The position numbers were made by a program, and so were the translations under genes. This document shows, in pieces, positions 1 through 64,000 of a DNA stretch of 64,000 nt. The notes beneath the pieces were generated by a model. It did no database searches. It worked only from the letters and a program-made list of their open reading frames with translations, and was not told the origin of the DNA. This DNA is from Selaginella moellendorffii (Eukaryota; Plantae; Lycopodiophyta), in assembly GCF_000143415.4 (NCBI RefSeq), contig NW_003314303.1, positions 904,613 through 968,612 of the forward strand, in the 5' to 3' direction. Position 1 is the first letter of the stretch, and the number at the start of each line of letters is the position of its first letter.

Positions 1-494
1 GATGGAGTCTGAGATGGACCCGAGATGGACCCGAGATGGAGTCCGAGATGGAGTCCGAGATGGAGTCCGAGATGGAGTCCGAGATGGAGTCCGAGATGGA
101 GTCCGAGATGGAGTCCGAGATGGACCCGAGATAGACCCGAGATAGACCCGAAATGGAGTCCGAGATGGAGTCCGAGATGGACCCGAAATGGAGTCCGAGA
201 TGGAGTCCGAGATGGACCCGAGATGGAGTCCGAGATGGAGTCCGAGATGGACCCGAGATGGACCCGAGATGGAGTCCGAGATGGAGTCCGAGATGGACCC
301 GAGATAGACCCGAGATAGACCCGAAATGGAGTCCGAGATGGACCCGAAATGGAGTCCGAGATGGAGTCCGAGATGGACCCGAGATGGAGTCCGAGATGGA
401 GTCCGAGATGGACCCGAGATGGACCCGAGATGGAGTCCGAGATGGAGTCCGAGATGGAGTCCGAGATGGAGTCCGAAGTCGAGACCGAGACCGG

Positions 495-532
<38 letters not shown>

Positions 533-636
533 TCGGGACCGAGACCGAGACCGAGGCCGAGGCCGAGACTGAGCCCGAGCCCGAGTCCGAGTCTGAATCC
601 GAGTCCGAGTCCGAGTCCGAGTCCGAGTCCGGAGCC
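1..636 (+). repeat. LTR-borne minisatellite: (GAGATGGAGTCC/GAGATGGACCC)n grading into (CCGAGA)n then (CCGAGT)n; also at ~5971-6610, 12570-13045, 15755-16115 (minus), 61392-61935
   Basis: Units read directly from the sequence; present in every LTR copy that includes the 5' half. Confidence 0.95.
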
Positions 637-1492
637 TGAGAGGGTGAAAGCCCAAAGCGTTCGTCTCCCAGACCCTGGGGGGTTTGGTGAGCTCCAAAAG
701 TATAGTAGGGGGGAGGACTGCAGTGGAGCCAGTTTGGCCAGGAAAGGCCAGTTTGGCCCAGGAAGGCCAGACCCAGTGTTGGGTGATGAACTGACCACTG
801 GGAAGTCCAAGACTAGAGTGAATACGGACCGACAAGCGGGGTAGCTTGGTGAAGTGTTCAAGAGCCGGCTCTAGTTCCCCCGGGAGATCGACTGGCCGAT
901 GCTCCCAGTCCAAGTGTGGGTGGCACTACCTACTTGGATACCAGGTGTGGCTCAACGGAACCTCGCTCTAAGCCCATGGCTAGAGCACCCAAGGGCAGAA
1001 GGTGGGGAGAGTACCCAGGTGGCTCGCGTAAGGCCACGGTGTTCCGAAATGTTGTCCCAAAGGCCCAGACTGTGGAAAGGAAGAGGAGTAGTCCTCTGGG
1101 GTAATGACCAAGGACACAGTCGTGTGGTGAGGAAGTTCCAGAGGACCGTGGGACTTAGTGGTCGGGCCTGTGGGCCTCGATCCAGTGGCAGTGTTGGCAA
1201 ACACGGCCAGGGGCAGAAAGGGACTTAGGGGGGACTGACAGAGGGACATTGGGGAAGGCTGTTCCCCGTGTCGGTGGGCATCCTAAGGATGCTAAGGAGT
1301 GGATTTGAGATGACCACTCATGGATGGTTGGCCCAGTCTTGGAGAGCCAAGACTGTGATGCAAGTGGTGTTGGACCACCAATGTGACCAAGGTAAATGGG
1401 CATGGCCTTAGCGTAACAGGCCGGTACGTCGGTGATACCTTAGGGTGTCGATCATGGGATCGGACACGTGGAGCACTTGGACCAAGTGTTTA

Positions 1493-1592
1493 NNNNNNNN
1501 NNNNNNNNNNNNNNNNNNNNNNNNNNNNNNNNNNNNNNNNNNNNNNNNNNNNNNNNNNNNNNNNNNNNNNNNNNNNNNNNNNNNNNNNNNNN
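1493..1592. other. Assembly gap (100 N)
   Basis: Run of N; corresponds to 63 bp (7468-7530) of the sister LTR. Confidence 0.99.
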
Positions 1593-1677
1593 GGAAGTTG
1601 TCAATGAGACTCCTCCAAGTGGTCAGACGTATGGTTAAGTGACTAAAGTAAAATGGAAAATTTAGTCGCTTACAACT

Positions 1678-1689
1678 TGGTATCGGAGC
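1678..1689 (+). promoter_or_regulatory. Primer-binding site for initiator tRNA-Met (TGGTATCGGAGC, one G:U wobble vs canonical TGGTATCAGAGC)
   Basis: 3 nt downstream of the LTR-terminal CA; identical in element 2. Confidence 0.9.
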
Positions 1690-3760
1690 TGTTCCTTAGT
1701 CCGACTTTTATTGGTGTTCAAGTATATCACCACTAGTGTTGGCATCGGAAGGTCCGAGGAGTGGGCCTATCCTTGAGGAGTAGCAAGTCTGGAAGACATG
1801 GCTCTCCATTACAGTTCATGTGTGAACTTGTAGACGAGGTGGTGGATAGAAAAGGGCCAATAATGGAACGACTTTGGGATCTTGGGAACAGTGCAAGGTT
1901 TTCCTCATTGAGTTGAGGATGTGATCCGGATGAGCATTTGTCTCAGCAAATTGGCTTAGGTTGTTGTGGTAAACAACTAAAGTTGGGATCACGGGAAAGA
2001 TAGAGACTCCAAAACAATAAAGGAGTCACAAGATTATCCTCATATAGTTGAGGTTGGTGCTCATGAATGTGAGACCAAAGGTAATGACCGTGGAAGGTCA
2101 AATACGGAAGGGGACTCAAGTCCTTGAAATGGTAGCCGGGGCTACCTCTAATAAATGCTGGAACAACCCAAGGAGTTGGGGGTGTATTAAGTGGATGAGT
2201 TGGTATTCTCATCACATGGACAAGTAGTCCTAAGGGGCAAAAGTTGCCCCCAGAGAACAAAATCAAGTGTCGGAGTAACACTTGTGAAAATAGTCCTTTT
2301 GAGTAGGACCGGAATGCAAGATGTGTATTCCAGTGAGCTAGTGCCTCACAAGTAGGACCTTACGGGTCGGTGGATTAACCAAGTCCAAAACTGCTAGACG
2401 ACTCAAGTAGAGTCAAAGGATGGTCCTAAAAAGGACTGAATGAAGCATTTGGACTGAGGTGCGTTGTACCCCACAAAGGATGGGGGGGGATCATAGGACC
2501 CAAGGATGAGAATAGAGAGTATCTCATCGATGGCAAAATGTGCCATGCTAAAGTTATAGGAAAGGTGTTCCCAGAAGAAAACAACTTTGACATAAAGTTG
2601 TGTGTGACCTCTATGGTGCCGTGCTAACAGATGGTTGGCATGAGAAAGAGCGGTGTTGGTCTTGGCAAAGACTTAGACACAAATGGAAATGTCATAGAGG
2701 TAGGCTCGTGGAGCCGATGGTGTGGAGACACCAAATGTGCCAAGGTGTGATACCTTGAGGCTATGTTGGTGGGTTCATAAGAACCCCTTGCCAAAGGAAT
2801 CCCAATGGAAATGGGAATGGCATAGCCTAAGCTGCAGAGCATGCAGTTGGAGTGTGGTGACCCAGATAGTGATGGAGGTGTGAAAGCACCAAGCAATGAG
2901 TTGTAGGACTTGACAACTATGAGGCAACTAAGCAAGAGGTGCAAAATAACTGGTTAAATGGGTAGAAGGTAGCTACCCAAGACTTCTAGTATAGGGAAGT
3001 CGGATATACCCTTACGGGGGATAAGTTGCTTATGTTGCGATATAGTAAGTCAATGTCATAAAAGGAAATACTCATTGTCAAGAAAGCCATCATTGGGACA
3101 CCCGAACACTCTAGAACACCAGAAGGTGGTGTTTGATGTCGCGAGGGCAATGGATAAAGCCCAAGGGACTAAGTCCTTAGCGAATGATGGATAGAAGGTG
3201 CTATCCAAATGTCCCAGGGTTGCGGAGACAGGAGAGGACTGTCTACCCGAGTTGGACAAAGCCAAAAATGGAATTTTGGCAAGGCTAGTGATGGGCATGT
3301 AAAGGCCCATAAGCAACAATGTAATCCCAGTGTGTAGGATTATAAGGTGAGCATACCCGGATTGAGGAACCACTCCCTAGGCTATTGGGTAGGTTCATCC
3401 CTAAGAATACTTGCTAAAGCGTGATAGAAAGTGCAAAGCTATCCTCCTGGTCTGGAGGAGAATGACCAAAGGAAAGGTGTGAAGCCAAAAGGCAAGAAGT
3501 AAGGGGATAGAACCGAACCATAGGAATCAAAGGGCATGACTAAGGTTGGTTATGCCAGCTGGGAGTGAAGAATCAAGTGGGGGCTCGAGGGTGTTGCTGC
3601 TAGCAACCGTGATGCCATGGAGAGTCTAAAATATGGAATTGTCCATATTAGACTATGTGGCATTTTGAAGGCTTGCAAAAAGGGAGGCCTTAGCAAGCTA
3701 AGGGACAAAGTTCCTTCAAGGTTCCCAAAGACGATTCTATGTAGCTTAGTACCTAAAAGG

Positions 3761-4560
3761 GCCAAGTGTAAATGGTTCAAGGAAAGCGTGAAATCAGAGT
3801 GGCACAGCAGAAGCGTGGTCTTGAAGCTTGCCATGAGGCAAGGTTATCAAGGTTAGGGAAGTAGTTCCCGAGTGTTCAAAGAGAGGGCTTTGAACGAAAG
3901 TCGATGGTCAAGGACTTTCACGCTTATGCAGGAACCATGTTACAATGGTCAGAGGACTTGCCAAGTGAGATTGGCAAGTCAGGGGAACAAATACCCTAGT
4001 TGAAGGTGATAACTTCAAAAAGGGTGGGCCATGGGGCCGAGCATGGAGGAGTCCATGCATGATCACAGACATGTCAAGTGAGAGGACTTGGCAGTGTGGA
4101 GGAACTAAGTTCCTAAGCTGTGATCTGTAGCGCGCTTTAAAAATAGGTTGGTGCACCGGCGTGGGGAGTCACGCCAGGCATCTAGTGTGATGCCGTTCGT
4201 AGATGCATATACGGAGGTTGGGTTCGAGTCCCGACCCTCTAGTGCTTGGGTTCGAGTCCCAAATCACTAGGGCGTGGTGATGGTTTGGAATATGAGGACA
4301 CTCATATTTCGGTGGTCATGGACTCTCAGTGGGGAGACTGGTTTGGGCACACCGCCAAGCGAGGGATGCCTCGAAGTCGTGATGCACGGTTAGATTGCTT
4401 AGTGTGAAAGCTCAGCATATCTAACTTGAACACTTTGGTGCAAGTGGCACCAAGGTCGTGGTGAGTGAGATGGGGACACCTAATCTCAGTTGCTATGAAC
4501 CCTTGGCCGTAAGGGCTAGCTTGGGTGCACTGCCAAGTGTGGGGGATGCCCCCGGGGTTA
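3761..4560 (+). ncRNA. Putative structured RNA domain inside element 1 (many hairpins, two tRNA T-arm-like stems); homolog at 10314-11115
   Basis: Stems read by eye: 3784-3793/3916-3925, 3827-3842, 3955-3980 (10-bp perfect), 4061-4068/4118-4125, 4158-4175, 4177-4194, 4216-4236, 4246-4262, 4289-4308. 3761-4126 is identical between the two elements. Confidence 0.55.
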
Positions 4561-5726
4561 TAGTCAACAACTTGGAGGTCTAGAAAACCAAGTACCTCTT
4601 GGCAACTCTGTTAAGGTGCCAAAGTGAGATCACTAGGTGATCTTATGGCCAGATAAGGACAAGGTCCTTGGTTGGCTAAGGAATGAAGTTCCTGGTTCAA
4701 AATGTTGAAATTGAACTGTTTAAGGTGGTGTGGCTTGGTCGTGATAACCAAGTGGGAAGAGCACCTAAGGGAAATAAACTATGTCCGTGCGATGGCATAG
4801 TGAGTTCGAGGAAAGTAGTCTCTATAAAAGACCCATGGGAGGGTCACGAAGTTGGGCCGTGGATAGAGCCCATAGCAGAAGATGCTAAAGAGACGTACTA
4901 GGGGTGAACGTCCTCCGGACTTGGCAAAGAAGAGTCTTTGCTATGGAACCAAAACAATACCTCAAGGAGGGAGGTAGAGATTCGATGTTGCTTGGTGCAA
5001 CAATCAACGGATAGGAGCAAAGGACTAGTGGCCAAAGTTTGGGCCATGGAATTTAATGGAAGGGATCCAAATGGCAAAGTTAGCCAAGGAACACTAATGT
5101 GTTCGATGCTAACAGCTTGTGGGAAAGGAAGCGGACTTTCAAGGATGGATTCCTAAGTGCTCCAATTTGGCGAAGTAAAGGCTCCAAGTGAGGGAGCGGT
5201 AAGGTAGCCAAATGATAGGGCCATGGACAGCCCTAGCACAAAGTATGATAAATGGAACTTAGTGCCCAAGGTGGCACGAAATAGAAGAGAGGATGATGGT
5301 GCCCTCAAGTAATGAACTTCCTAGGATAGGGAAGTGGAGTTGCACAATCTGTGCAATGCAAGGTGTTGGAGACACCTAGGAAATTGACTCCCAAAAAGTC
5401 AAAAGAGTAAAAGTTCCAAGGTGCAAACATTCAATAGATGGAAATTGAGACTACTCGAGAAGGAGTAGTGGGATTGACTTAGAGAAGGGTCTCTAAGAGG
5501 TTTAGCAAGAACTAAACCAATAAAAGGGGAGAACCATTACATGTGGTCCAATCAGTCTCTAAGTTGGAGAGACTACGCTCCTTAAAGGATGGACAAGGCA
5601 TGGTGAGCCTTTGATGTCAAACCATAGACAAAGATTGGCTAGGTGCCAATGATGGAAATGGTAACACGTGTGGGTGTTACTTTATGAAAGGGTTTACCGT
5701 TCGATGAGGACATCGAACTTCGTCTA

Positions 5727-5739
5727 TGGGTGGTGGAGT
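5727..5739 (+). promoter_or_regulatory. Polypurine-tract-like primer (TGGGTGGTGGAGT) preceded by an 8-bp hairpin at 5699-5718; same tract at 12328-12340
   Basis: Immediately 5' of the TG that starts the 3' LTR. Confidence 0.75.
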
Positions 5740-7612
5740 TGTGAGACACAAAATCCCTAGGCCCCAAAGTGGAGCCGGAAGGGCGCCACATGGTAGTGGC
5801 CGAAGCGAGAGCCAAACGAGCGTAACACGTTTGGACCAAAAGCTCCGACTTGAAAAGTCAAGAGCGGGAGTGGAACTCCCAACGAAGTGCTCGAGGAACG
5901 AGCACGAAGCGAGCAAAAGGCGAGGCTCCAAAAAGGGACCCAAAAGGACCAACACATGACACGTGGGAGTGTCCGAGATGGAGTCCGAGATGGAGTCCGA
6001 GATGGACCCGAGATGGAGTCCGAGATGGAGTCCGAGATGGAGTCCGAGATGGACCCGAGATAGACCCGAAATGGAGTCCGAGATGGAGTCCGAGATGGAG
6101 TCCGAGATGGACCCGAAATGGAGTCCGAGATGGAGTCCGAGATGGAGTCCGAGATGGACCCGAGATAGACCCGAAATGGAGTCCGAGATGGAGTCCGAGA
6201 TGGATCCCGAGATGGACCCGAAATGGAGTCCGAGATGGACCCGAGATAGACCGAGATAGACCCGAAATGGAGTCCGAGATGGAGTCCGAGATGGACCCGA
6301 GATGGAGTCCGAGATGGAGTCCGAGATGGACCCGAGATAGACCGAGATAGACCCGAAATGGAGTCCGAGATGGATCCCGAGATGGACCCGAAATGGAGTC
6401 CGAGATGGAGTCCGAGATGGAGTCCGAGATGGAGTCCGAAGTCGAGACCGAGACCGGGACCGAGACCGAGACCGAGACCGAGACCGAAACCGAGACCGAG
6501 ATCGGGACCGAGACCGAGACCGAGGCCGAGGCCGAGACTGAGCCCGAGCCCGAGTCCGAGTCCGAATCCGAGTCTGAGTCCGAGTCCGAGTCCGAGTCCG
6601 AGTCCGGAGCCTGAGAGGGTGAAAGCCCAAAGCGTTCGTCTCCCAGACCCTGGGGGGTTTGGTGAGCTCCAAAAGTATAGTAGGGGGGAGGACTGCAGTG
6701 GAGCCAGTTTGGCCAGGAAAGGCTAGTTTGGCCTAGGAAGGCCAGACCCAGTGTTGGGTGATGAACTGACCACTGGGAAGTCCAAGACTAGAGTGAATAC
6801 GGACCGACAAGCGGGGTAGCTTGGTGAAGTGTTCAAGAGCCGGCTCTAGTTCCCCCGGGAGATCGACTGGCCGATGCTCCCAGTCCAAGTGTGGGTGGCA
6901 CTACCTACTTGGATACCAGGTGTGGCTCAACGGAACCTCGCTCTAAGCCCATGGCTAGAGCACCCAAGGGCAGAAGGTGGGGAGAGTACCCAGGTGGCTC
7001 GCGTAAGGCCACGGTGTTCCGAAATGTTGTCCCAAAGGCCCAGACTGTGGAAAGGAAGAGGAGTAGTCCTCTGGGGTAATGACCAAGGACACAGTCGTGT
7101 GGTGAGGAAGTTCCAGAGGACCGTGGGACTTAGTGGTCGGGCCTGTGGGCCTCGATCCAGTGGCAGTGTTGGCAAACACGGCCAGGGGCAGAAAGGGACT
7201 TAGGGGGGACTGACAGAGGGACATTGGGGAAGGCTGTTCCCCGTGTCGGTGGGCATCCTAAGGATGCTAAGGAGTGGATTTGAGATGACCACTCATGGAT
7301 GGTTGGCCCAGTCTTGGAGAGCCAAGACTGTGATGCAAGTGGTGTTGGACCACCAATGTGACCAAGGTAAATGGGCATGGCCTTAGCGTAACAGGCCGGT
7401 ACGTCGGTGATACCTTGGGGTGTCGATCATGGGATCGGACACGTGGAGCACTTGGACCAAGTGTTTAAGGTTGAGTGGCATGGATACCATTCTCGGGGTT
7501 AGCAAGCCCCAAGTCCTGAGTTGGACTTATGGAAGTTGTCAATGAGACTCCTCCAAGTGGTCAGACGTGTGGTTAAGTGACTAAAGTAAAATGGAAAATT
7601 TAGTCGCTTACA
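5740..7612 (+). repeat. 3' LTR of element 1 (1873 bp)
   Basis: TG...CA termini; followed by CTCGC (candidate TSD), which resumes the host LTR. Confidence 0.95.
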
Positions 7613-8229
7613 CTCGCGTAAGGCCACGGTGTTCCAAAATGTTGTCCCAAAGGCCTAGACTGTGGAAAGGAAGAGGAGCAGTCCTCTAGGGTAGTGACCA
7701 AGGACACAGTCGTTTGGTGAGGAAGTCCCAGAGGACCATGGGACTTAGGGGCTGGGCCTGTGGGCCTCGATCCAGTGGCAGTGTTGGCAAACACGGCCAG
7801 GGGCAGAAAGGGACTTGGTAGGAACTGACAAAGGGACTTTGGGGAAGGCAATTCCCCAGGTCTGTGGGCATCCTAAGGATGCTAAAGAGTGGATCTAGGA
7901 TGACCACTCGTGGACAGATGGCCCAGTCTTGGAGAGACGGGATTGTGATGCAAGTGGTATTAGACCACTAGTGCAGCAAAGGTGAATGGGCATGGCCTTA
8001 GTGTAACGGGCCGAGATGTCAGTGGTACCTTTGGGTGTCGGTCTTGGGACCGGACACGAGGAGCACTTGGACCAGGTGCAAGTGTTGAGTGGCATGGATG
8101 CCATTCTTGGGGCTAGCAAGTCCCAAGTCCTGAATTGGACTTAAGGAGGTTGTGAGTGAGACTCCTCCAAGTGGTCAAAGGTGTGGTTAAGTGACTAAAG
8201 TAGAATGGAAAAATTAGTCGCTTACAACT

Positions 8230-8241
8230 TGGTATCGGAGC
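8230..8241 (+). promoter_or_regulatory. PBS (tRNA-iMet) of element 2
   Basis: TGGTATCGGAGC 3 nt after the LTR end at 8226. Confidence 0.9.
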
Positions 8242-11200
8242 TGTTCCTTAATCCGACTTTTATTGGTGCTCAAGTATATCACCATTGATGTTGGCATTAG
8301 AAGGTCCTAGGAGTGGGCCTATCCTTGAGGAGTAGCATGTCGAGAGGACATGGCTCTCCACTCAAGTTCGTGCGTGAACTTGGGCACGATGTGGTGGATA
8401 AAAAAGGGCCAATAATAGAACGACTTTGGGATCTTGGGAACGGTATAAGGTTTCCTCAGAGAGCTGAGGATGTGATCCAGATGAGCGTTTGATGCAGCAA
8501 ACGGGCTAACATAGTTGTGGTAAACAACTATAATTGGGATCACGGGAAAGATGTAGACTCCAAAATAATAAAGGAGTCACAAGATTACCCTCATATAGTT
8601 GAGGCCGGTGTTCATAACTTTGAGACCCGAATTGATGACCATGGGAGGTCAAATATAGGAGAGGACACAAGTCCTCGAAATGGTAGCTGAGGTTACCCTT
8701 GATAAATGCTGGAACAACCCAAGGAGTTAGGGATGTACTTAGAGGATGAGTTGGTATTCTCATCACATGGACAAGTGGTCCTAAGAGGCAAAAGGTTGCC
8801 CCAAGAGAACAAATCAAGTGTCGGAGTAACACTTGCAAAGATGGTCCTTGTGAGTAGGACCTGAATACAAGAAGTTGTATTCCAATGAGCTGGCACCTCA
8901 AAGGTAGGACCTCATGGGTCGTCGGATGACAAAGTCCAAAAAACTGGATGACTCCAATAGAGTCAAGGAATAATCCTAAAGGACTGATAGGAGCATTTGG
9001 ACTAAGGTGTGTTGTACCCCATGAAGGATGGGGGGGGATCATAGGATCCAAGGATGAGAACAAAGGGTATCTCATCGATGGCAAAATGTGTTGTGCTAAA
9101 GTCGTGGGAAAGGTGTTCCCAAAAGGAAAAACAACTTTGACACAAAGTTGTGTGTGACCTCTATGGTGCCGTGCTAACAGATGGTTGGCATAAGAAAGAG
9201 CGGTATTGGTCTTGGCAAAAACTTAGACACAAAGAAAAAGTGTCATAGAGGTAAGTTCGTGGAGCCGATGGTGTGGAGACACCAAATGTGCCAAGGTGTG
9301 ATACCTTGAGGCTATGTTGGTGGGTTCGTGAGAACCCCTTGCCAAAGGAATCCCAATGGAAATGAGAATGACATAGCCTAAGCTGCAGAGCATGCAGTTG
9401 GAGTGTGGTGACCCAGATAATGATGGAGGTGTGGAAGCACCAGCAATGAGTTGTAGGACTTGACAACTATGAGGCAACTAAGCGAGAGGTGCAAAATAAT
9501 TGGTTAAACGGGTAGAAGGTAGCTACCCAAGCCTTCTTAATGGCATAAGGAAGTTGGATATACCCTTACGAGGGATAAGTTGCTTATGTTGCCATATAAT
9601 AAGTCAATGTCATAAAAGGAAATACTCATTGTCAAGGAAGCCATCATTGGGACACCCGAACACTCTAGAACACTAGGAGGTGGTGTTTGATGTTGCGAGG
9701 GCAATAGATAAGGCCCAAGGGACTAAGTCTCTAGCGAATGATGGATAGAAGGTGCTATCCAAATGTCCAAGGTGGCGGAGACAGGAGAAGACTGTCCACT
9801 CGAATTGGACAAAGCCAAAAATGGAATTTTGGCAAGGCTAGTGATGGGCATATAAGGGCCCATAAACAATAACGTAATCCCGGTGTGTGGGATTATAGGG
9901 TGAGCATACCTGGATTGAGGAACCACTCCCTAGGCTATCGGGTAGGTTCATCCCTAAGAATACTTGCTAAGGCGTGATAGAAAAGTGCAAAGCTATCCTC
10001 CTAGTCGGGAGGAGAATGACCAAAGGAAAAGTGTGAAGCCAAAAGTAAGTAGTAAGGGGATAGAACCAAACCATAGGAATCGAAAGACATAACCAAGGGT
10101 AGTTATGCCAGTTGGGAATGGAGAATTAAGTGGGGGCTCGAGGGTGTTGTTGCTAGCAACCGTGATGCCATGGAGAGTCTAAAATATGAAATAGTCCATA
10201 TTAGACTATATGGCAACTAGAAAGCTTGCGAAAAGGGAAGCTTTAGCAAGCTAAGGGACAGAGTTCCTTCAAGGTTCCCAAAGACAATTCTATGTAGCTT
10301 AGTACCTAGAAAGGCCAAGTGTAAATGGTTCAAGGAAAGCGTGAAATCAGAGTGGCACAGCAGAAGCGTGGTCTTGAAGCTTGCCATGAGGCAAGGTTAT
10401 CAAGGTTAGGGAAGTAGTTCCCGAGTGTTCAAAGAGAGGGCTTTGAACGAAAGTCGATGGTCAAGGACTTTCACGCTTATGCAGGAACCATGTTACAATG
10501 GTCAGAGGACTTGCCAAGTGAGATTGGCAAGTCAGGGGAACAAATACCCTAGTTGAAGGTGATAACTTCAAAAAGGGTGGGCCATGGGGCCGAGCATGGA
10601 GGAGTCCATGCATGATCACAGACATGTCAAGTGAGAGGACTTGGCAGTGTGGAGGAACTAAGTTCCTAAGCTGTGATCTATAGCGCGCTTTGAGTATAAG
10701 TTGGTGCACCGGCGTGGGGAGTCACGCCAGGCATCCTGGGTGATGCCGTCCGTAGATGCATATACGGAGGTTGGGTTCGAGTCCCGACCCTTTAGTGCTT
10801 GGGTTTAAGTCCCAAATCACTAGGGCGTGGTGATGGTTTGGAATATGAGGACACTCATATTTCGGTGGTCATGGACTCCTAATGAGGAGACTGCCTTGGG
10901 CACACTGCCAAGTGGGGGATGCCCCGGAGTCATGATGCACGGTTAGATTGCTTAGAGTGAAAGTTTGGCATATCTAACTTGAACACTTTGGTGCAAAGGG
11001 CACCAAGGACGTGGTGAATGAGATGGGGACACCCAAGTCTCAGTTGCTATGGATCCTTGGCCAAAAGGGGCTAGCTTGGGCTCACCGCCAAGTGTGGGGG
11101 ATGCCCCCGGGGTCATAGTCAACAACTTAGAAGGGTCTGGAAGACCTAGTCCCTATTGATAGACCTATTAAGGGGTCAAGATAAAATCACTAAGTGATCT

Positions 11201-12340
11201 TGTGGCTAAACAAGGACAAAGTCTTTGTTTGGGTTAAGGAATATGATTCCTAGTTCAAAGTGTTGATTTGAACTATTAATAAAGGTGTGGCTTGGTTGAG
11301 GTGACCAAGTGGGAAGAACACCTAAGGGAAATGAGCTATGTCAATGCTATGGCATAGTAAGTCCAAGGAAAGTAGTCTCTATAAAAGATCCAAGGGAGGG
11401 TCTCAAAAAGTTGGGCCGTGGATAAAGCCCACGACAGAAAATGTTAAAGAGACGTACTAGGGGTGAACACCCTTTGGACTTGGCAAAACAAAGTGTTTGC
11501 TATGGAACCAAAAGGAAACCTCAAAAATAGAGGTAGCGATCCTATGTTGCTTGGTGCAACAATCCAAGGATAGGAGCAAAAGACGAGTGCCCAAGATAGG
11601 GCGGTGGAATCCGTTGGAAAGAATCCAAGTGGCAAAGTTAGCCAAAGAACACTAATGTGTTTGGTGCTAATGGATTGCGGAAAAAGAAGTGGACTTCCAA
11701 GGACGGATTCCCAAGTGCTCCAATTTGGCAAATGAAAGGCTCCAAGTGAGGGAGCAACTAAGTAGCCAAAAGATAGGGCCGTGGACAGCCCTAACACAAA
11801 TAATGATAAATGGAACGTAATGCCAATGGTGGCACAAAAATAGAAAAGAGGATGAGGGTGCCCTCGAGTAGAGAACTTCCTAGGAGGGGAAGTGGAGTTG
11901 CATAAAATGTGCAAGGCAAGGTGTCGGAGACACCTAGGAAATTGACTTCAAGAAGTCAAAAGTAAACGTTCCAAAGTGCAAAGATAGATCAATGGAATCT
12001 ATGACTACTCAAGAATGAGTAGTGGAATTGAGTTAGAGAGGGTGTCTCTAACGGGTTTAGCGAGGACTGAACCAATAAAAAGGAGCAACCCACCCCAAGT
12101 GGTCAAGTGAGTCTCTAAGTTGGAGAGACTATCCTCCTTAGAGGATGGGCAAGGCATGGTGAGCCTTTGGTGTCAAACCATTGACGAATATGGAGAAGGC
12201 CTGGTGAGCCTTCAATGTCAAACCATTGACAAATATTGGCTAGGTGCCAAGGATGGAAATGGTAACAAATGCGGGTGTTACTTTATAAAATGGTTTACCG
12301 TTCGATGAGGACATCAAACTTCGTCTATGGGTGGTGGAGT

Positions 12341-14041
12341 TGTGAGATACAAAATCCCTAGGCCCCAGAGTGGAGCTGGAAAGGGTGCCACATGGTAATG
12401 GCCGAAGCGAAAGCCAAACGAGCGTAACACGTTTGGACTAAAAGCTCCGACTTGGAAGGTCGAGAGTGGGAGTGGAACTCCCAACAATGGCTCGAGGAAC
12501 AAGCACGAAGCGAGCAATAAGTGAGACTCCAAAAAGGGACCCAAAAGGACCAACACATGACACGTGGAGGAGTCCGAGATGGAGTCCGAGGTGGAGTCCG
12601 AGATGGAGTCCAAAGTGGAGTCCGAGATGGACCGAGACGGAGTCCGAGATGGAGTCCGAGGTGGAGTCTGAGATGGAGTCCAAAGTGGAGTCCGAGATGG
12701 AGTCCGAGATGGACCCGAGATGGAGTCCGAGATGGAGTCCGAGGTGGACCGAGACGGAGTCCGAGATGGACCCGAGATGGAGTCCGAGATGGAGTCTGAG
12801 GTGGACCGAGACGGAGTCCGAGATGGACCCGAGATGGAGTCTGAGATGGACCGAGATGGAGTCCGAGATGGAGTCCGAGATGGAGTCCGAGAAGGACCCG
12901 AGATGGAGTCCGAGGTCGAGACCAAGACTGAGACCGAGACCGAGACCGAGACCGGGATCGAGACCGGGACCGAGACCGAGACCAAGGCCAAGGCTGAGAC
13001 TGAGCCTGAGTCCGAGTCCGAGTCTGAGTCCGAGTTCGAGTCTGAGAGGGTGAAAGCCCAAAGCGTTCGTCTTCCAGACCCTGGGGGGTTTGGTGAGCTC
13101 CAAAAGTATAGTAGGGGGAGGACTACAGTGGAGCCAGTTTGGCCAGGAAAGGCCAGTTTGGCCCAGGAAGGCCAGACCCAGTGTTGGGTGATGAACTAAC
13201 CACTGGGAAGTCCAAGACTAAAGTGAATACGGACCGACAAGCGGGGTAGCTTGGTGAAGTGTTCAAGAGCCGGCTCTAGTTCCCCCGGGAGATCGACTGG
13301 CCGATGCTCCTAGTCCAAGTGTGGGTGGCACTACCTACTTGGATACCAGGCGTGGCTCAATGGAACCTCGCTCTAAGCCCATGGCTAGAGCACCTAAAGG
13401 CGAAAGGCGGGGAGAGTACCCAGGTGGTTCGCGTAAGGCCACGGTGTTCCAAAATGTTGTCCCAAAGGCCTAGACTGTGGAAAGGAAGAGGAGCAGTCCT
13501 CTAGGGTAGTGACCAAGGACACAGTCGTTTGGTGAGGAAGTCCCAGAGGACCATGGGACTTAGGGGCCGGGCCTGTGGGCCTCGATCCAGTGGCAGTGTT
13601 GGCAAACACGGCCAGGGGCAGAAAGGGACTTGGTAGGAACTGACAAAGGGACTTTGGGGAAGGCAATTCCCCAGGTCTGTGGGCATCCTAAGGATGCTAA
13701 GGAGTGGATCTAGGATGACCACTCGTGGACAGATGGCCCAGTCTTGGAGAGACGGGATTGTGATGCAAGTGGTATTGGACCACTAGTGCAGCAAAGGTGA
13801 ATGGGCATGGCCTTAGTGTAACGGGCCGAGATGTCAGTGGTACCTTTGGGTGTCGGTCTTGGGACCGGACACGAGGAGCACTTGGACCAGGTGCAAGTGT
13901 TGAGTGGCATGGATGCCATTCTTGGGGCTAGCAAGTCCCAAGTCCTGAATTGGACTTAAGAAGGTTGTGAGTGAGACTCCTCCAAGTGGTCAAAGGTGTG
14001 GTTAAGTGACTAAAGTAGAATGGAAAAATTAGTCGCTTACA
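12341..14041 (+). repeat. 3' LTR of element 2 (1701 bp)
   Basis: TGTGAG...GCTTACA. Confidence 0.95.
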
Positions 14042-17000
14042 ACAGTAGAATTAACCTACTCACAACAAAGAGTTGTATATCATAATTGCTACTGTGAAGG
14101 AATGGCAACATTATCTATATGGATCGAACTTCCATGTAGATTCAAATCATTAGTCTCTCCAAATGTGGATCTTCGAGGCCACCTTGTTCATTGGCAAGAG
14201 TTCTTGCAGAAAATATTTGTTAAGATCCAGTACAAGCATGGAGGTGACAATAAGATGGCTGATGCATTATCCAGGATGGTAAATTCTATCTCATTCATGA
14301 AGCTATCCAATGATCTCTTAGATGAGCTTAAGGAGTTTGTTGACTTCGATTGCTTTATCACTAGTATTCATGTGAGGGTTTTGTTGAGGGACGCTTTTAT
14401 AGATTTGAAGGGTGACAAATTTGTGTCATTCAAAATACAAGATGGAATCCTAGTGAAGAAGGAACATGTAATGGTTCCTCGTGTTGACAAACTCATGATG
14501 TGCCAAATGCTGGGCATCTAAGGGTATGAAAAGGTTTTTTTTTGGCCAAATGTTAAGAAGTACATATATGATTGTTTGACCTGCCAAGTGGTCAAAGTTG
14601 ATCATCAGAAGCTTGTTAGCCTCTATCATCCTTTATGTGTACCTGAGAATAAGTGGGATAACATCTCGATGAACTTTATCACTAGTTTGCCCAAAACCTT
14701 TTGAAGAAATGATATTATTTGGGTTATTGTGGATCATTTGACGAAGATGGCTCATGTAAGCGACTAAATTTTCCATTCTATTTTAGTCACTTAACTACAC
14801 CTTTGACCACTTGGAGAAGTCTCATTCACAACTTCCATAAGTCCTTTTCCGGACTTGGGGACTTATTAGCCCCAAGAATGGCATCCGTGCCACTCAACTG
14901 TTGCACTTGGTCCAAGTGCTCCATGTGCCTGGTCCCAAGACCGACACCCCAAGGTACCACTGATATACTAGCCCGTTACGCTAAGGCCATGCCCCTTCAC
15001 CTTGGTCACACCGGTGGTCCAACATTACCTGCATCGTAGTCCTGTCTCTCTAGGATTGGGCCATCTGTCCAGGAGTGACCATCCAAGATCCACTCCTTAG
15101 CATCCTTAAAATGCCCACAGATATGGGCAACAGCCTTCCCCAATATCCCTTTTACAGTCCCCACCAAATCCCTTTTCTGCCCATGGCTATGTTCGCCAAC
15201 ACTGCCACTAGGACAAGGCCCATAGGCCCGACCACTAAGTCCCACTGTCTTCTAGGACTTCCTCACCATATGACCGTATCATTGGTCACTACACCAGAGG
15301 ACCACTCCTCTTCCTTTCTATAGTTTGGGGCTTTAGGACAACATTTTGGAACACTGTGGCCTTACGCAAGCCTCATGGGTACTCTCCCCACCTTTCATCT
15401 TTTGGTGCTCTAGCCATGGGCTTAGAGCAAGGTTCTGTTGAGCCACACCAGGTATCCAAGTAGGTAGTGCCACCCAAACTTGGATTGGGAGCATTGATCA
15501 TTCGATCTCCCGGGGGAATTAGAGTTGGCTCTTGAACACTTCACCAAGCTACCCCACTTGACAGTCCATATTCACTTTAGTTTTGGACCTCCTAGTGGTT
15601 ATCCCGTCACCCAACACCTGGGCACGGCCTTCCTGGGCCAAACTAGCCTTTCCTGGCCAAACTGGCTCCACTGGAGTCCTCCCCCTATTATACTTTTGAA
15701 GCTCACCAAACCTCCAGGGTCTGGGAGATGAACGCTTTAGGCTTTCACCCTCTCAGACTCGAACTCGGACTCGGACTTGGACTCGAACTCGAACTCGGGC
15801 TTGGGCTTGGTCTCGGCCTCAGCCTCGGCCTCGGTCTCGGTCTCGGTCCGGTCTCGGTCTTGGTCCCGTTCTCGGTCTCGGTCCCGGTCTCAGTCTTGGT
15901 CTCGGTCTCGACTTCAAACTCCATCTCGGGTCCTTCTCGGACTCCATCTCGGATTCCATTTCGGGTCCATCTCAGTCCATCTCGAACTCCATCTCGGACT
16001 CCATCTTAGGTCCATCTCAGACTCAATCTCGGGTCCATCTTGGGTCCATCTCGGGTCCACCTCAAACCCCACCTCGAACTCCATCTTGGACTCCATCTCA
16101 GACTCCACCTCGGACACTTTCACGTGTCATGTTTTGGTCCACTTGTGTCCCCTTTTCTAGAGACTCACTTATGGCTCACCTCGTGCTTGTTCCTCGAGCA
16201 CTTCGTTGGGAGTTCCACTCCCACTCTTGACCTTTTCAAATCGGAGCTTTTAGTCCAAATGTGTTACGCTCGTTTGGCTTTCGCTTCGGCCACTACCACA
16301 TGGCACCCTTTCGGCTCCACTTTGGGGCCTAGGGATTTTGTGTCTCACAGCTCACTTCTTCCTGCTAAAGATGACGATAAAAGCTTCTAAACTTGCTCAG
16401 TTGTTTGTAGACCTGTTATTCAGTCTTTATGTTTTGCCAAGTCTGATTAGAATCCTAAGTTCATGTCCAAGTTTTGGCAAACGGTCTTTAAGAACTAAAG
16501 ACTAAGCTAAGTATGAGTAGTGGTGAGCATCCACAATCAGATGGGCAGACAAAGCATATGAATCAGCTATTAGAAGATATGTTGAGGTCTTTTGTGAGAA
16601 ACTTGACTCAACAAGGAGTATGGGAGAAATATTTGCCTTTACTTCAATTTGCTCACAATAGTGCTTATTAATCAATTATTGGCATGTCTCCTTTTATGGC
16701 AATGTATCGCTATGAGCCTAGGTCTTCTATGAGTTTGAATTTGGCTTTGGTTCGGGTACCTCATGCTTGTGATTTCCTGGAGGATATGCAAGACAAGCTT
16801 GAGTTGGCAAAGTTAAACATGGGGCAAGCTCAAGAGCAAAACAAAAGATTGGCTAATGAACATTGTCATCATCAAAAGTACAAAGTTGGTGACAAGGTAT
16901 TCCTTAAGCTGTCAGATGCACAACAGTCTCTAAAAGGAGGTGGTAGTGCTAAGTTGTCTCTACAATATTGTAGGCTTTGGACAATTTATAGCATGTGGGG

Positions 17001-60150: not shown

Positions 60151-62322
60151 TTGCTTTCTAACGATTGTATCATTTTCGTCAAGAAGCATTTAAGTTAGTG
60201 ATGCAATTTAACGTTTGTTTTTTACTTCATGCTGAGCTAAATATGTCAAAGAGGATCAAGTTGGGAATGTTATGGCTAGCACTTCATGAAAATCTTGTAA
60301 AACTTGTGTATACACTTGCTTTAGCCACCTTTGATAATATTTTTCATTTGGTACAATGTTATGAAACATTGCCTTTTTTATTTTTCGTTACACGTCTTTT
60401 AGCTCCACTTCCTATTAGAGATGATTATGTTCCAATGGAGGTGGATGTTGTTGCTGTCGAAATTCAATGACAAAGACGAGGATGTAGTTATAGCTGTGAT
60501 GTTTATTGTTGGGCATATGATGAAATTAATTACACTTATCAATGTTGTCAACATTTTCCAAATTGATGACCTCTATTTTTTGGGTGGAGATCTTGGTATC
60601 AACAATATCTTATTAGTGTTGTTGTAATAGAAGATTTAGACACTAAGATGCTTCTGGGAAATGAGGAGTCACACAAATAGTGAAGGATCTTTGCATGAAT
60701 AAATTAGTGACCTTTCCATCATTTTTTTAGGAGGGCACAAGTTTATTTAATGCTTATTTTCTAAATTTGTTTTTATAAAAAGAAATATTTTATTATTCTC
60801 TTTGTGTTGGTTAATATATGCTTGAGTTTATCCTCTATTGCTTAGTTTATTGCCACACATTGCCATCTATATTTGCGTCATGTGGCAAAACTAATTTTCA
60901 TTTTTTATGGCAATGGATATACATATGCATATGTATGGGATTAGGTGGATCTAATTGTACATATGAGTGATTTAAACCTTAAGTTATAGTTGTTGCAAGT
61001 GGTGCCAAGTCAAATTTTTGACTTCATCCTTGGTATGGATTGGTTATGATGCAATTATGCCAAATGTGACTTTAAAACTTTTCCCCCTTATCTTATATTT
61101 TTTTATATGTTTTTTAGTCCTTTTACTTATGTTATTTTTCATTTCTCTACTTCTATCTTTACTTCCATCACTTTTGTCTCTTTATTACTTTCTCCTATCT
61201 TTTTGTTTTGTTCATTTATTCCCTTTTTTGATCCTTTTGACGATCTTTGTGTTGCAATGATTGACTTATGAAAGAGTTGTGAGACACAAATCCCTAAGCC
61301 CCAAAGTGGAGCCAAAAGGGTGCCACGTGGTAGTGGCCGAAGCGGAAGCCAAACGAGCATAACATGTTTGGATTAAAAGTTCCAACTTGAGGAGTCCGAG
61401 ATGGACCTGAGACGGAGTCTGAGATGGATCCGAGATGGAGTCCGAGATGGACCCGAGATGGAGTCTAAGATGGACTTGAGATGGAGTCCAAGATGGACCT
61501 GAGATGGAGTCTGAGATGGACCTGAGATGGAGTCTGAGATGGAGTCTAAGATGGAGTCCGAGATGGACCCAAGATGGAGTTCGAGATGGACCCGAAATGG
61601 AGTCCGAGATGGACCGAGATGGAGTCCGAGATGGAGTCCAAGATGGACCCGAGATAAAGTTTGAGATGGACCCGAGATGGAGTCTGAGATGGAGTTTGAG
61701 ATGGAGTTCGAGATGGACCCGAAATGGAGTCCGAAATGGAGTCCGAGATGGAGTCCAAGATGGACCTGAGATGGAATCTGAGATGGAGTCTGAGAAGGAC
61801 CAGAGATGGAGTCCGAAGTCGAGACCGAGACCGAGACCGGGACCGAGAGTGAGACCGAGGCTGAGGCCGAGACCGAGCCCAAGCCCAAGTCTGAGTCCAA
61901 GTTTGAGTCCAAGTCCGAGTCTAAGTTCAAGTCTGAGAGGGTGAAAGCTCAAAGTGTTCGTCTCCCAGACCCTGGGGGGTTTGGTGAGCTCCAAAAGTAT
62001 AGTAGGGGGAGGACTCTAGTTGAGTCAGTTTGGCTAGGAAAGGCCAGTTTGGCCCAGGAAAGCTGTATCCAGGTGTTGGGTGATGGGATAACCACTGGGA
62101 GGTCTAAGGCCAGAGTGAATATGAACTGTCAACCAGGGTAGCTTGGTGAAGTGTTCAAGAGCTGGCTTTAGTTCCCTCGGGAGATCGAATGGTTGATGCT
62201 CCTAGTCCAAGTGTGGGTGGCACTACCTACTTGGATACCTGGCATGGCTTAATGAAACTTCACTTTAAGCCCATGGCTAGAGCACCCAAAGGCAAAAAGC
62301 AGGGAGAGTACCCACAAGGCTT

Positions 62323-62916
62323 GTGAAGCTCTTGGATTTGGACTTCCCGGGAGGTCACCCAACCCAGTATTATTCAAACCCAAGGATGCTTAACCCCAAA
62401 TATCCCAAGACCCTTAACCGATTGGAAAAGGGGGTACACTCTTGTTCATGGGCTCTTTCCCTCTATATTTAAACCCTATGGACCATCTCTCGAGTCGTTC
62501 TCTTTGGTTGCTTACAATCCACCACGCTTCCCTGCAAGTTCACGCCCTCGTGAACAGAAGCTGAGAGCCGCAGCTCTCCCGAGAGAGCCGCTCTCTTGAC
62601 ACCCTACCCCTCGGGTCGAGCCCAACGGGAGCAAATTGGACCAGCCAGATGTCAATCAACATGTGATGTGATTCCCCTAACCAACCAACAGAGTCGGACC
62701 CGAGACCCCCTCTAATACCAAATGTAAGCTCCTGGATTTGGACTTCCCGGGAGGTCACCCAGCCTAGTACTATTCAAACCCAAGGACGCTTAACCCTAAA
62801 TATCCCAAGACCCTTAACCGATTGGAAAAGGGGGTGCACTCTTGTTCATGGGCCCTTTCCCTCTATATTTGAACCCTATGGACCGTCTCTCGAGTCGTTC
62901 TCTTTGGTTGCTTACA
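62323..62916 (-). mobile_element. Cassandra-type TRIM: two 194-bp LTRs (62723-62916, ~62323-62516) and a 206-bp internal domain
   Basis: Direct repeats at 400-bp period, TGTAAGC...GCTTACA termini, PBS TGGTATTAGAG (62710-62720, minus), PPT AGGGAAGCGTGGTGGAT (62517-62533, minus), 5S rRNA-derived block in each LTR. Confidence 0.92.
62740..62795 (-). promoter_or_regulatory. 5S rRNA-derived internal Pol III promoter (A box, IE, C box) in the Cassandra 5' LTR; second copy at 62340-62395
   Basis: Minus strand GGTTAAGCGTCCTTGGGTTTGAATAGTACTAGGCTGGGTGACCTCCCGGGAAGTCC vs plant 5S (from memory) AGTTAAGCGTGCTTGGGCGAGAGTAGTACTAGGATGGGTGACCTCCTGGGAAGTCC. Confidence 0.9.
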
Positions 62917-64000
62917 CCGAAATGTTATCCCAAAGTCCCAGACTGTAGAATGGAAGAGGAGCAGTCCTCTAGTGTGGTGACCAAAGATACAATCATATGG
63001 TGAGAAAGTCCTAGAGGACAATGGGACTTAGTGGTCAGGCTTGTGGGCCTTGTCCCAGTGGCAGAGTAGGCAAACTCGGCTATGGATGGAAAAGGGACTT
63101 GGTGGGGATTGTAAAAGGGATATTGGGGAAGGCAGTTCCCCCTGTCTATGGGCATCTTAAGGATGATAAGGAGTGGATCTTGGATGGTCACTCCTGAACG
63201 GATAGCCCAGTCATTGAGAGACGGGATTGCAATGTAGGTGGTGTTGGACCACCGGTGGTACCAAGGTGAATGGGCATAGCTTTAGCGTAACGGGCTGGTA
63301 TGTTGGTGGTACCTTGGAGTGTCGGTCTTGGGACCGGACATGTGAAGCACTTGGACCAAGTGCAAATGATGAGTGGTATAGATGCCATTTTCGGGGCTAG
63401 CAAGTCCCAAGTCTTGAATTGGACTTAAGGAGGTTGTAGATGAGTCTTCTCCAAGTGGTCAGAGGTGTGGTTAAGTGACTAAAGTAGAATGGAAAAATTA
63501 GTCTCTTACAGGAGTATGCTAACCTCTTTGAATTTGAGTTGTCATTTGAGGTTAAGATTGCAACATGTCATCTTATTCCCATTAGGGATGCTCATCTAAT
63601 CAAGGTTCTTATTTGTTTTTAGTCACCAAAAGAGATCAAGATTTTACATGCAAACATCAAAGAGATGTTGGAAAAAAGTGTTATTTAAAAGTCGCAAAGT
63701 CCTTGGGCATGTGAACCTTATCTTATGACAAAGCCTGATGGGAGTATTCATTTTTGCATTGACTATCATTTGTTAAATAAAGTGACAACCTTGGATGTGT
63801 ACCCTCTTTTTCACATTGCTAATCTCCTAGATTGTTTGGGGAGAAATTATTAGTTTATTAAGTTAAATTTTGCTTCTAGGTACTAGCAAGTGTTGATCGC
63901 TGAGGAAGATATTCCAAAAATTACTTTTTGTATAACATTTAGTTTGTATAAGTTCTTAGTGATGCCGTTTGGTTTAAATAATGCTTTAACAACATTTCAA

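What the first reader, a model, noticed from the sequence alone, without database searches (positions are those of the whole stretch)
62517..62722. Cassandra internal domain is homologous to the LARD post-PBS leader: candidate shared-helper system of non-autonomous RNAs
Seen: on its sense strand the 206-bp Cassandra interior aligns colinearly with the LARD leader (1678-1847; 8230-8399). GTCCGACT lies at exactly nt 22-29 from the PBS start in Cassandra and element 1. It is followed in order by TTGGT, ATCAC, TTGRCATC, GGTCC, TGGGC, GAGGRGTAG, GGCTCTC, a GTTCA..GTGAACTTG hairpin and GTGGTGGAT. Both families end in GCTTACA, use a tRNA-iMet PBS and have GTGGTGGA in the PPT, while the LTR bodies look unrelated. 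Established: TRIMs and LARDs encode no proteins and need a helper, and packaging signals usually lie just after the PBS. Inference: both RNAs carry the same packaging/dimerisation signal for one autonomous element. Cassandra may be a minimal leader-only derivative that uses the leader GTGGTGGAT as its PPT.
Basis: partly seen in the sequence, partly recalled or inferred. Interest (0 to 1): 0.85.

Follow-up and report, generated by a model that had tools for sequence, protein, structure and literature searches.

The report
Cassandra interior matches LARD leader
In a spikemoss genome, the whole 206-base interior of a tiny gene-less 5S-carrying retrotransposon (Cassandra) is a diverged copy of the first 170 bases inside a large gene-less retrotransposon (a LARD), so the two parasites probably descend from one lineage and use the same copying machinery, but that helper was not found.

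Summary
Window 62323-62916 is a Cassandra-type TRIM on the minus strand, with 5S-like LTRs and an initiator-tRNA-Met primer-binding site (PBS).

Its 206-nt interior aligns end to end with the post-PBS leader of two non-coding LARD copies (1675-1850, 8227-8402):
- z is 6-8 against dinucleotide shuffles, with or without the PBS and the GTGGTGGAT motif.
- In nhmmer searches the LARD leaders are the only non-self hits in the window.
- With profiles over 167 kb that include four Selaginella moellendorffii loci, E-values reach 6e-8.

The two families also share the LTR tips (TGTRAG...GCTTACA), the PBS, and GTGGTGGA 1-2 nt before the 3' LTR. The LTR bodies are unrelated.

The functional reading, one packaging or dimerisation signal for one helper, is plausible but not shown:
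- There are no compensatory base changes between the families.
- The ordered motif blocks are no blockier than simulated neutral divergence.
- No gag-pol element with this leader turned up.
- Two chromovirus families with the same PBS type lack the leader.

Stranded RNA-seq shows sense transcripts of related Cassandra copies across the interior.

Best reading: the two families share descent by internal deletion or recombination and keep a common set of replication sequences, so they probably share one unidentified helper. The scan had already noted the same homology on other DNA of this genome (s1-419378).

The parts
62323..62916 (-). Cassandra-type TRIM, 594 bp, inserted in reverse orientation in a LARD solo LTR
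   Evidence: Two 194-bp LTRs about 95% identical; 5S-like match in both; PBS; no ORF over 72 aa
62723..62916 (-). Cassandra 5' LTR (TGTAAGC...GCTTACA); the 5S-like part is at 62813-62726
62517..62722 (-). Cassandra interior, the finding: PBS 62720-62709; GTCCGACT 62699-62692; ATCAC boxes 62672-62663; GGCTCTC hairpins 62589-62563; GTTCAC..GTGAAC hairpin 62555-62538; GTGGTGGAT 62525-62517
62323..62516 (-). Cassandra 3' LTR; the 5S-like part is at 62413-62326
1675..1850 (+). LARD element 1 leader (PBS 1678-1689, GTGGTGGAT 1839-1847), homologous to the Cassandra interior
8227..8402 (+). LARD element 2 leader (PBS 8230-8241, GTGGTGGAT 8391-8399)
1..7612 (+). LARD element 1: 5' LTR cut by the window start and holding an N gap (to 1674), non-coding interior 1675-5739, 3' LTR 5740-7612 (TGTGAGACAC...GCTTACA); the LTRs are 95.4% identical
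7613..14041 (+). LARD element 2: 5'-truncated LTR 7613-8226, non-coding interior 8227-12340, 3' LTR 12341-14041; the short LTR part is 99.35% identical to 13429-14043
5730..5737 (+). GTGGTGGA 2 nt before the LARD 3' LTR (a second copy is at 12331-12338)
61278..63510 (+). LARD solo LTR that hosts the Cassandra; flanks AGAGT/GGAGT
   Evidence: empty-site contigs
14755..16349 (-). LARD solo LTR with a 5-bp target duplication (GCTCA) inside a chromovirus integrase; this copy fixes the true LTR ends

Best explanation
The Cassandra interior and the first ~172 nt of the LARD interior are two diverged copies (about 60% identity with indels) of one ancestral module. The module runs from the initiator-tRNA-Met primer-binding site to a GTGGTGGAT box.

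The two gene-less families share every short sequence that a reverse transcriptase and integrase must recognise: the LTR tips TGTRAG...GCTTACA, the PBS, the post-PBS leader, and GTGGTGGA just upstream of the 3' LTR. Their LTR bodies are unrelated. Cassandra has a 5S-type, presumably Pol III, promoter. The LARD has a long LTR with a 12-bp tandem array.

Shown: the homology, the shared ends, the lack of coding capacity in both families, and sense transcription of Cassandra family members through the interior.

Inferred:
(a) The Cassandra interior arose from a longer LARD-like or autonomous relative by loss of everything between the leader GTGGTGGAT and the GTGGTGGA next to the 3' LTR. This could be a deletion or a template switch between the two boxes.
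(b) Because both families keep the same cis-sequences, both are copied and inserted by the proteins of one, still unidentified, autonomous LTR retrotransposon.
(c) The leader probably holds the part that this helper recognises for packaging or priming.
For: - Alignment statistics.
- Homology covers the whole interior and ends exactly at GTGGTGGAT.
- GTGGTGGA is present at the leader end and before the 3' LTR in the LARD, and before the 3' LTR in Cassandra.
- LTR tips are shared but bodies are not.
- The LARD has no Pfam hit and no gypsy remnant.
- Two other LTR families with the same PBS type do not carry the leader, so it is not generic to tRNA-iMet-primed elements.
- Stranded RNA-seq reads cover 62477-62846, almost all in one direction, from copies 90-95% alike.
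- A decayed Cassandra LTR-PBS joined to a LARD interior in L003 fits exchange between the two families.
- Positions shared with LARD copy 1 vary less among six Cassandra copies (31% against 49% variable, P 0.02). The effect is weaker with copy 2 (P 0.36).
Against: - No autonomous element with this leader, these LTR tips or this GTGGTGGA box was found in the window or in about 103 kb of S. moellendorffii loci.
- No compensatory changes support a conserved RNA fold between the families. Where the LARD differs, 2-5 predicted pairs are kept and 6-11 are broken.
- Folding energies are ordinary (z -0.7 and -0.9).
- The motif blocks are as expected under uniform neutral decay.
- The leader is no better conserved than the rest of the interior between the two LARD copies.
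- The direction of descent (TRIM from LARD, or LARD from TRIM) is not resolved.
- The repeat of the leader end at the LARD 3' end is not significant beyond the 8-mer.
Confidence: 0.6

Rival explanations
1. Shared ancestry only. The leader came into one family from the other by a one-off recombination or template switch at the PBS, and has since drifted. It has no role beyond the PBS and the plus-strand primer, and the two families need not share a helper today.
For: - Blockiness of identities equals neutral simulation.
- No covariation.
- No extra conservation of the leader between LARD copies.
- Chimeras joined at the PBS exist in this genome (earlier notes s1-402654 and s1-432119, which I did not check myself).
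Against: - The LTR tips and the GTGGTGGA box next to the 3' LTR are shared too, and these lie outside a single PBS-to-leader swap.
- There is a weak depletion of variable sites at shared positions.
- Any non-autonomous element must keep working cis-signals in order to amplify to the copy numbers seen (DNA contigs).
Confidence: 0.25
2. Reverse direction of descent. The LARD grew out of a Cassandra-like TRIM. Its 'leader' is the complete old TRIM interior, including the old plus-strand primer box. About 3.9 kb of foreign sequence and a new GTGGTGGA box were added behind it, and the LTRs were replaced.
For: - The leader homology spans the entire TRIM interior, with both of its ends (PBS and GTGGTGGAT) intact inside the LARD.
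- The LARD interior has no trace of gag or pol.
- The LARD LTR is a mosaic: it shares a 70-100-nt module with a chromovirus LTR (E 7e-8).
Against: - Internal deletion is the usual route to TRIMs and needs one step here.
- No intermediate forms were seen in the 167 kb sampled.
- With one diverged pair of families, no outgroup roots the comparison.
Confidence: 0.12
3. Chance, or convergence imposed by the common PBS and a G-rich plus-strand primer.
For: Against real 250-nt windows the margin is modest (313 against 276). Single-sequence nhmmer E-values are only about 0.004.
Against: - z is 6.1-6.5 after removing the PBS and GTGGTGGAT.
- Profile E-values reach 6e-8 over 333 kb of searched strand, with no significant hit outside Cassandra interiors and LARD leaders.
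- Control leaders with the same PBS score z 0-1.8.
Confidence: 0.03

Closest known systems
Cassandra, the 5S-carrying TRIM lineage (Kalendar et al. 2008; Maiwald et al. 2024, 10.1101/2023.07.14.548913; 'TRIMp3' of Kojima 2024, PMC10886601)
   Same: Size under 1 kb, short LTRs with a 5S-derived part, methionine-tRNA PBS, no coding capacity, and sense transcripts.
   Different: - The host is a lycophyte. The papers I could read describe Cassandra from ferns and seed plants.
- The 5S-like part of this copy lacks about 32-36 nt and scores below Rfam's threshold.
- The literature treats the interior as a 'stuffer' (PMC7215508). Here it has a homologue in another family.
LARDs, large retrotransposon derivatives (Kalendar et al. 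2004, as cited in PMC7215508)
   Same: Long LTRs, PBS, a non-coding interior of about 4.1 kb, high copy number, and no gag or pol.
   Different: The barley LARDs are not known to share their leader with a TRIM. The LTR here carries a 12-bp tandem array and shares one module with a chromovirus LTR.
Cassandra-related TRIMs without a 5S promoter in Carduoideae (Maiwald et al. 2024)
   Same: A second non-autonomous LTR family shares part of the internal region with Cassandra while its LTRs differ.
   Different: Those are small TRIMs in Asteraceae. Here the partner is a 6-8 kb LARD, the whole Cassandra interior is covered, and the match sits at the LARD's 5' end.
Non-autonomous/autonomous pairs that share internal rather than LTR sequence: SMART with FRetro64, Helenus with Copia-9_PGr (PMC3281118; PMC10886601)
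   Same: Similarity is restricted to the internal portion and the LTR tips, and is read as a mark of dependence on one helper.
   Different: In those cases one partner encodes gag-pol. Here both partners are gene-less and the coding partner is missing.
Ty1 and Ty3 extended primer and 5'-3' interactions
   Same: A box downstream of the PBS (CACCAC) can pair with a box at the 3' end (GTGGTG). The 3' box resembles part of the primer tRNA.
   Different: No experiment and no covariation supports this. In Ty3 the 3' box is complementary to the tRNA, whereas here it has the same sense as the tRNA.

Membership tests
Cassandra (5S-carrying TRIM) | Complete element under about 1 kb with short direct LTRs | tested here: met
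   594 bp; LTRs 194 bp, about 95% identical
Cassandra (5S-carrying TRIM) | 5S rRNA-derived sequence with Pol III control boxes in each LTR | tested here: inconclusive
   Rfam 5S_rRNA match in both LTRs, E 4e-5 and 1.4e-4, but 32-34 bits against a gathering score of 38, and 32-36 model positions are missing. RNA reads from related copies carry the missing 5S-like part (loose ends at 62794). Promoter boxes were not examined.
Cassandra (5S-carrying TRIM) | Methionine-tRNA PBS after the 5' LTR and a plus-strand primer tract before the 3' LTR | tested here: met
   TGGTATTAGAGG in this copy; reads and contigs of the family have G instead of A at 62714, which gives TGGTATCAGAGG. AGGGAAGCGTGGTGGAT abuts the 3' LTR.
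Cassandra (5S-carrying TRIM) | No coding capacity | tested here: met
   Longest ORF is 72 aa and has no homologue
LARD | LTRs, PBS and a plus-strand primer site around an interior of several kb | tested here: met
   LTR about 1.7-1.9 kb, interior 4.06-4.11 kb, PBS 1 mismatch from the tRNA-iMet type
LARD | Interior encodes no gag, pol or env | tested here: met
   No sense-strand ORF over 79 aa inside the interior before the LTR repeat array; no Pfam domain in the ORFs tested; tblastn with 42 gypsy proteins finds nothing below E 0.04
LARD | Conserved RNA secondary structure of the interior (claimed for barley LARDs) | not tested
   Only the leader was folded; its folding energy is ordinary
Parasite-helper pair (Dasheng/RIRE2, BARE2/BARE1, SMART/FRetro64 type) | An autonomous gag-pol element with the same LTR tips, PBS, leader and plus-strand primer site | tested here: not met
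   None found in the window or in L001-L004. The two chromovirus families seen have LTR ends ...GCTACA, the tract GAGGAAGGGGAGAA in the primer position, and unrelated leaders. The sample is only 167 kb, so absence from the genome is not shown.
Structured packaging or dimerisation signal | Base pairs kept through compensatory changes between diverged members | tested here: not met
   0 compensatory changes between Cassandra and the LARD in a structure-blind projection. The high figures come from an alignment fitted to the structure.

The most novel reading that the evidence does not exclude
The shared 170-nt module is a self-contained 'replication cassette' that lets one unknown helper copy both a Pol III-driven TRIM and a Pol II-driven LARD.

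The cassette would consist of the tRNA-iMet PBS, a CACCAC box about 40 nt downstream, and a 3' box. In Cassandra the 3' box copies nt ~12-29 of the initiator tRNA itself (17 of 18 bases). The 3' box and the primer tRNA would then compete for the CACCAC box. That would bridge the RNA ends for strand transfer, a plant counterpart of the Ty1 and Ty3 primer and cyclisation contacts.

If this is right, the cassette sequence is the handle that finally identifies Cassandra's helper.
Probability: 0.12. Interest if true: 0.8.

Novelty: new variant of a known kind. Interest (0 to 1): 0.55.

Why it matters
The element that mobilises Cassandra is a long-standing unknown. [quoted passage not shown]

Cassandra's interior is usually dismissed as a stuffer. 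Here it is a recognisable relative of another family's leader, and the LTR tips and the 3' primer box are shared as well. This gives a concrete sequence signature to search for in gag-pol elements: TGTRAG...GCTTACA tips, tRNA-iMet PBS, the leader, and GTGGTGGA before the 3' LTR.

It also links a presumably Pol III-transcribed TRIM and a LARD as probable competitors for one machinery. And it places a Cassandra-type element in a lycophyte.

Tried and rejected
- **Helper search by protein.** A chromovirus RNase H-integrase piece from the window (14102-14518) found 14 representatives. These led to four S. moellendorffii loci. The chromovirus families there share the PBS type but not the leader, the LTR tips or the primer tract.
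- **Further homologue searches.** The search with P0003 gave only two Selaginella proteins. The search with the L004 reverse transcriptase ORF was swamped by angiosperm gypsy proteins. The search with the 72-aa Cassandra ORF found nothing.
- **Exact look-up of the window's PPR protein.** Not on record. The species call therefore rests on the shared repeat families.
- **Coding remnants in the LARD.** None found.
- **Conserved fold.** RNAalifold on three sequences gives an unfavourable covariation term. A covariance model adds little over a sequence-only model for the LARD hits. The strong numbers are set aside because that alignment was fitted to the structure. The structure-blind projection shows no compensation.
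- **Idea that the last ~45 nt of the LARD interior repeat the leader end (hairpin plus GTGGTGGA).** Not significant beyond the 8-mer and a GAACTT at equal spacing. The Cassandra 3' end matches the leader end better (z 3.5-8) than the LARD 3' end (z 1-3.5).
- **Idea that the post-PBS leader is a read-through copy of the primer tRNA (complement).** No signal (z below 1).
- **Idea that LARD LTR position 1259 is the transcription start.** Left open.
- **Earlier-notes look-ups by sequence and by some word sets.** Blank.

Full report
**What is at the coordinates**

- Its two 194-bp LTRs (62723-62916 and 62323-62516) are about 95% identical. In the sense orientation they begin TGTAAGC and end GCTTACA.
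- Each LTR gives a 5S_rRNA match on the minus strand (E 4e-5 and 1.4e-4; 34 and 32 bits, below the gathering score of 38, with 32-36 model positions missing).
- After the 5' LTR comes TGGTATTAGAGG, two mismatches from the tRNA-iMet primer-binding site (PBS).
- Nearly all RNA reads and DNA contigs of the family have G instead of A at 62714, which restores TGGTATCAGAGG.
- The 206-nt interior (62517-62722) ends in AGGGAAGCGTGGTGGAT directly against the 3' LTR.

This is a Cassandra-type element, with the caveat that this copy's 5S part is shortened.

**The 'LARD'**

The left 16 kb of the window holds copies of one non-coding LTR family.
- The true LTR ends come from a reverse solo LTR (14755-16349) with a 5-bp target duplication, GCTCA. 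The LTR begins TGTGAGACAC and ends GTCGCTTACA.
- Element 1 has a 5' LTR up to 1674, an interior at 1675-5739 and a 3' LTR at 5740-7612. Its LTRs are 95.4% identical.
- Element 2 starts with a 5'-truncated LTR (7613-8226), then an interior at 8227-12340 and a 3' LTR at 12341-14041.
- Inside the interior, before the LTR repeat array, the sense strand has no ORF above 79 aa. The ORFs tested have no Pfam domain. Forty-two gypsy proteins give no tblastn match below E 0.04.
- The label LARD therefore fits. A further solo LTR (61278-63510) hosts the Cassandra.

**Is the similarity real?**

- The sense strand of the interior aligns end to end with 1676-1850 and 8228-8402, with 128 and 123 identities. 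z is 6.5-8.1 against 1000 dinucleotide shuffles and none reach the observed score. The reverse-complement controls are at background.
- Without the PBS and GTGGTGGAT, z is still 6.1-6.5.
- nhmmer with the interior against all 64 kb, both strands, returns only the two leaders, full length (E 0.0037 and 0.0065; reciprocal 0.015).
- I then fetched four loci of Selaginella moellendorffii (GCA_000143415.2). They contain the same two families, so the window is this species or a very close relative.
- With profiles over 166,666 bases, the LARD-leader profile hits five of six complete Cassandra interiors end to end (E 5.7e-8 to 1e-4). The only other matches are two non-significant partial ones inside further Cassandra interiors. 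The Cassandra profile hits LARD leaders at 3e-5 and 8e-4.
- The leaders of two chromovirus families that use the same PBS type score z 0-1.8.
- The LTR bodies are unrelated.

**What else is shared**

- The LTR tips (TGTAAGCAAC against TGTGAGACAC, and ...GCTTACA in both).
- The PBS.
- GTGGTGGA 1-2 nt before the 3' LTR in both families. The LARD has the same box a second time at the end of its leader, exactly where the homology with Cassandra ends.

The simplest history is loss of everything between the two boxes in a LARD-like or autonomous ancestor. The opposite direction, a TRIM that gained 3.9 kb, is not excluded. I could not show that the LARD's 3' end repeats the leader end beyond the 8-mer.

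**Is it a functional RNA signal?**

I found no positive evidence beyond the homology itself.
- Folding energies are ordinary (z -0.7 and -0.9).
- Six Cassandra copies support a consensus fold mostly through G-U-compatible transitions.
- A covariance model built on that fold finds the LARD leaders at 28.8, 17.5 and 15.7 bits. A sequence-only model gives 23.3, 18.7 and no hit.
- On the model-fitted alignment 89% of cells pair, but that alignment leans towards the structure.
- When the Cassandra pairs are projected onto the LARD through a structure-blind alignment, 73-83% still pair, against 31-54% for slid controls. However, 25-27 of those pairs are simply unchanged sequence. Changed pairs are kept 2-5 times and broken 6-11 times, and none is compensatory.
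- The run-length pattern of identities matches simulated neutral decay (P 0.3-0.5).
- The two LARD copies are 87.5% identical in the leader and 87.3% overall.
- One weak hint of constraint: positions shared with LARD copy 1 vary less among Cassandra copies (31% against 49%, P 0.02; copy 2, P 0.36).
- A CACCAC box about 40 nt after the PBS can pair with GTGGTG of the 3' box in both families. This is conserved by descent and untested.

**Expression**

Three stranded RNA-seq runs labelled with the same species cover 62477-62846 at depths of about 5-60.
- Almost all first mates lie on the plus strand. In the usual library type this means minus-strand RNA, which is Cassandra's sense strand.
- No read is 99% or more alike and most are 90-95% alike. 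Other family copies, not this one, are the source.
- Some reads over the 5S-like part belong to other 5S-like RNAs (loose ends at 62738 and 62794).
- The flanking LARD LTR has almost no reads at the 88% threshold. This says little, because this solo LTR is only about 82-84% like the other copies.

**The helper**

It was not found. The chromoviruses seen (window 14042-17330; L001 about 2450-18446; L004 minus strand about 26-6965, with LTRs 96-98% identical and long ORFs) have the following features:
- LTR ends ...GCTACA.
- GAGGAAGGGGAGAA in the plus-strand primer position.
- Unrelated leaders.

The LARD LTR does share a 70-100-nt module with the chromovirus LTR (E 7e-8). A decayed chimera in L003 joins a Cassandra LTR and PBS to a LARD interior. 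Earlier notes of this scan report many Cassandra-chromovirus and Cassandra-LARD chimeras joined at the PBS. I did not check those loci.

**Comparison with what is known**

- Non-autonomous LTR elements that keep the cis-sequences of a partner are well known. Examples are SMART/FRetro64 and Helenus/Copia-9_PGr (PMC10886601, PMC3281118).
- Cassandra-related TRIMs that share part of the interior but lack the 5S promoter were described in Carduoideae (10.1101/2023.07.14.548913).
- What is different here: both partners are gene-less, one is a LARD, the whole Cassandra interior is involved, and the host is a lycophyte.
- In the papers I could read, Cassandra's helper is stated to be unknown (PMC10886601) and its interior is called a stuffer (PMC7215508).
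- The same homology was already noted by this scan on other DNA of this genome (s1-419378), with the same conclusion. My tests were made independently of that note.

**Verdict**

Homology is near certain (about 0.95). A shared helper is likely (about 0.6). A specific packaging or dimerisation structure is unproven (about 0.3).

Noticed in passing
62519-62535 (-): The 3' end of the Cassandra interior (GCAG-GGAAGCGTGGTGG) is a sense-strand copy of nt ~12-29 of the eukaryotic initiator tRNA-Met, the same tRNA whose 3' end matches the PBS. The human 5' half printed in PMC13625232 agrees except at one base. The LARD boxes keep only GTGGTGG. The species' own tRNA gene was not available.
   Followed up: partly
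62314-62323 and 62916-62925: The Cassandra has no target-site duplication. Compared with other copies of the LARD LTR (empty-site contigs), 19 bases (CGCGTAAGGCCACGGTGTT) are replaced by the element. The left junction lies within 1 nt of the LTR position where LARD element 2's truncated 5' LTR begins (7613), and at the homologous point a chromovirus in L001 starts to have matching LTRs (2923/18039). This may be a recurrent breakpoint, perhaps the U3/R border.
   Followed up: partly
7606-7620: LARD element 2 begins with only the last 614 bp of an LTR, joined directly to the last base of element 1's 3' LTR (GCTTACA|CTCGCG). This partial LTR is 99.35% identical to element 2's own 3' LTR, while element 1's LTRs are 95.4% identical. 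It is an unusual tandem junction whose origin I did not work out.
   Followed up: no
6616-6685 (LARD LTR positions 877-946); L004 6587-6696 (-); L001 2756-2817: The LARD LTR shares a 70-100-nt module (GGGTGAAAGCCCAAAGCG...GTATAGTAGGG) with the LTR of a chromovirus family that has near-identical LTRs and long ORFs (E 7e-8). The LARD LTR is therefore a mosaic, partly related to a chromovirus LTR.
   Followed up: partly
1-640, 5971-6616, 12569-13047, 61391-61877, 15752-16115: The U3 part of every LARD LTR holds a long, variable array of 12-bp tandem repeats (GAGTCCGAGATG type). This creates spurious ORFs of 200-330 aa on both strands.
   Followed up: no
17800-58400: The middle of the window is a three-fold tandem segmental duplication (units of about 14.9 and 18.9 kb, 92-99% identical) carrying PPR-repeat genes and a protein kinase gene. 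Only the third copy has an uninterrupted 816-aa PPR ORF.
   Followed up: no
14042-14754 and 16355-17330; 63517-64000: Decayed chromovirus (Ty3/gypsy with chromodomain) fragments are the insertion targets of the LARD LTRs. The integrase is split by the reverse solo LTR with target duplication GCTCA.
   Followed up: partly
L003 14480-15000 (-): A heavily C-to-T-decayed chimera: the end of a Cassandra interior, a Cassandra LTR and a PBS, then a jump into the LARD interior about 240 nt past the leader.
   Followed up: partly
62726-62813 and 62326-62413 (-): A 5S-carrying TRIM in a lycophyte. Gao et al. 2016 (PMC4717578) reported Selaginella TRIMs but said no family other than Cassandra has 5S sequence, and the Cassandra papers I could read list ferns and seed plants. 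Expressed family members carry a longer 5S-like part than this copy.
   Followed up: partly
3859-4033 against 10412-10586: The two LARD interiors, 87% identical overall, are 100% identical over about 175 nt and at least 95% identical over about 500 nt in the middle. This may be gene conversion.
   Followed up: no
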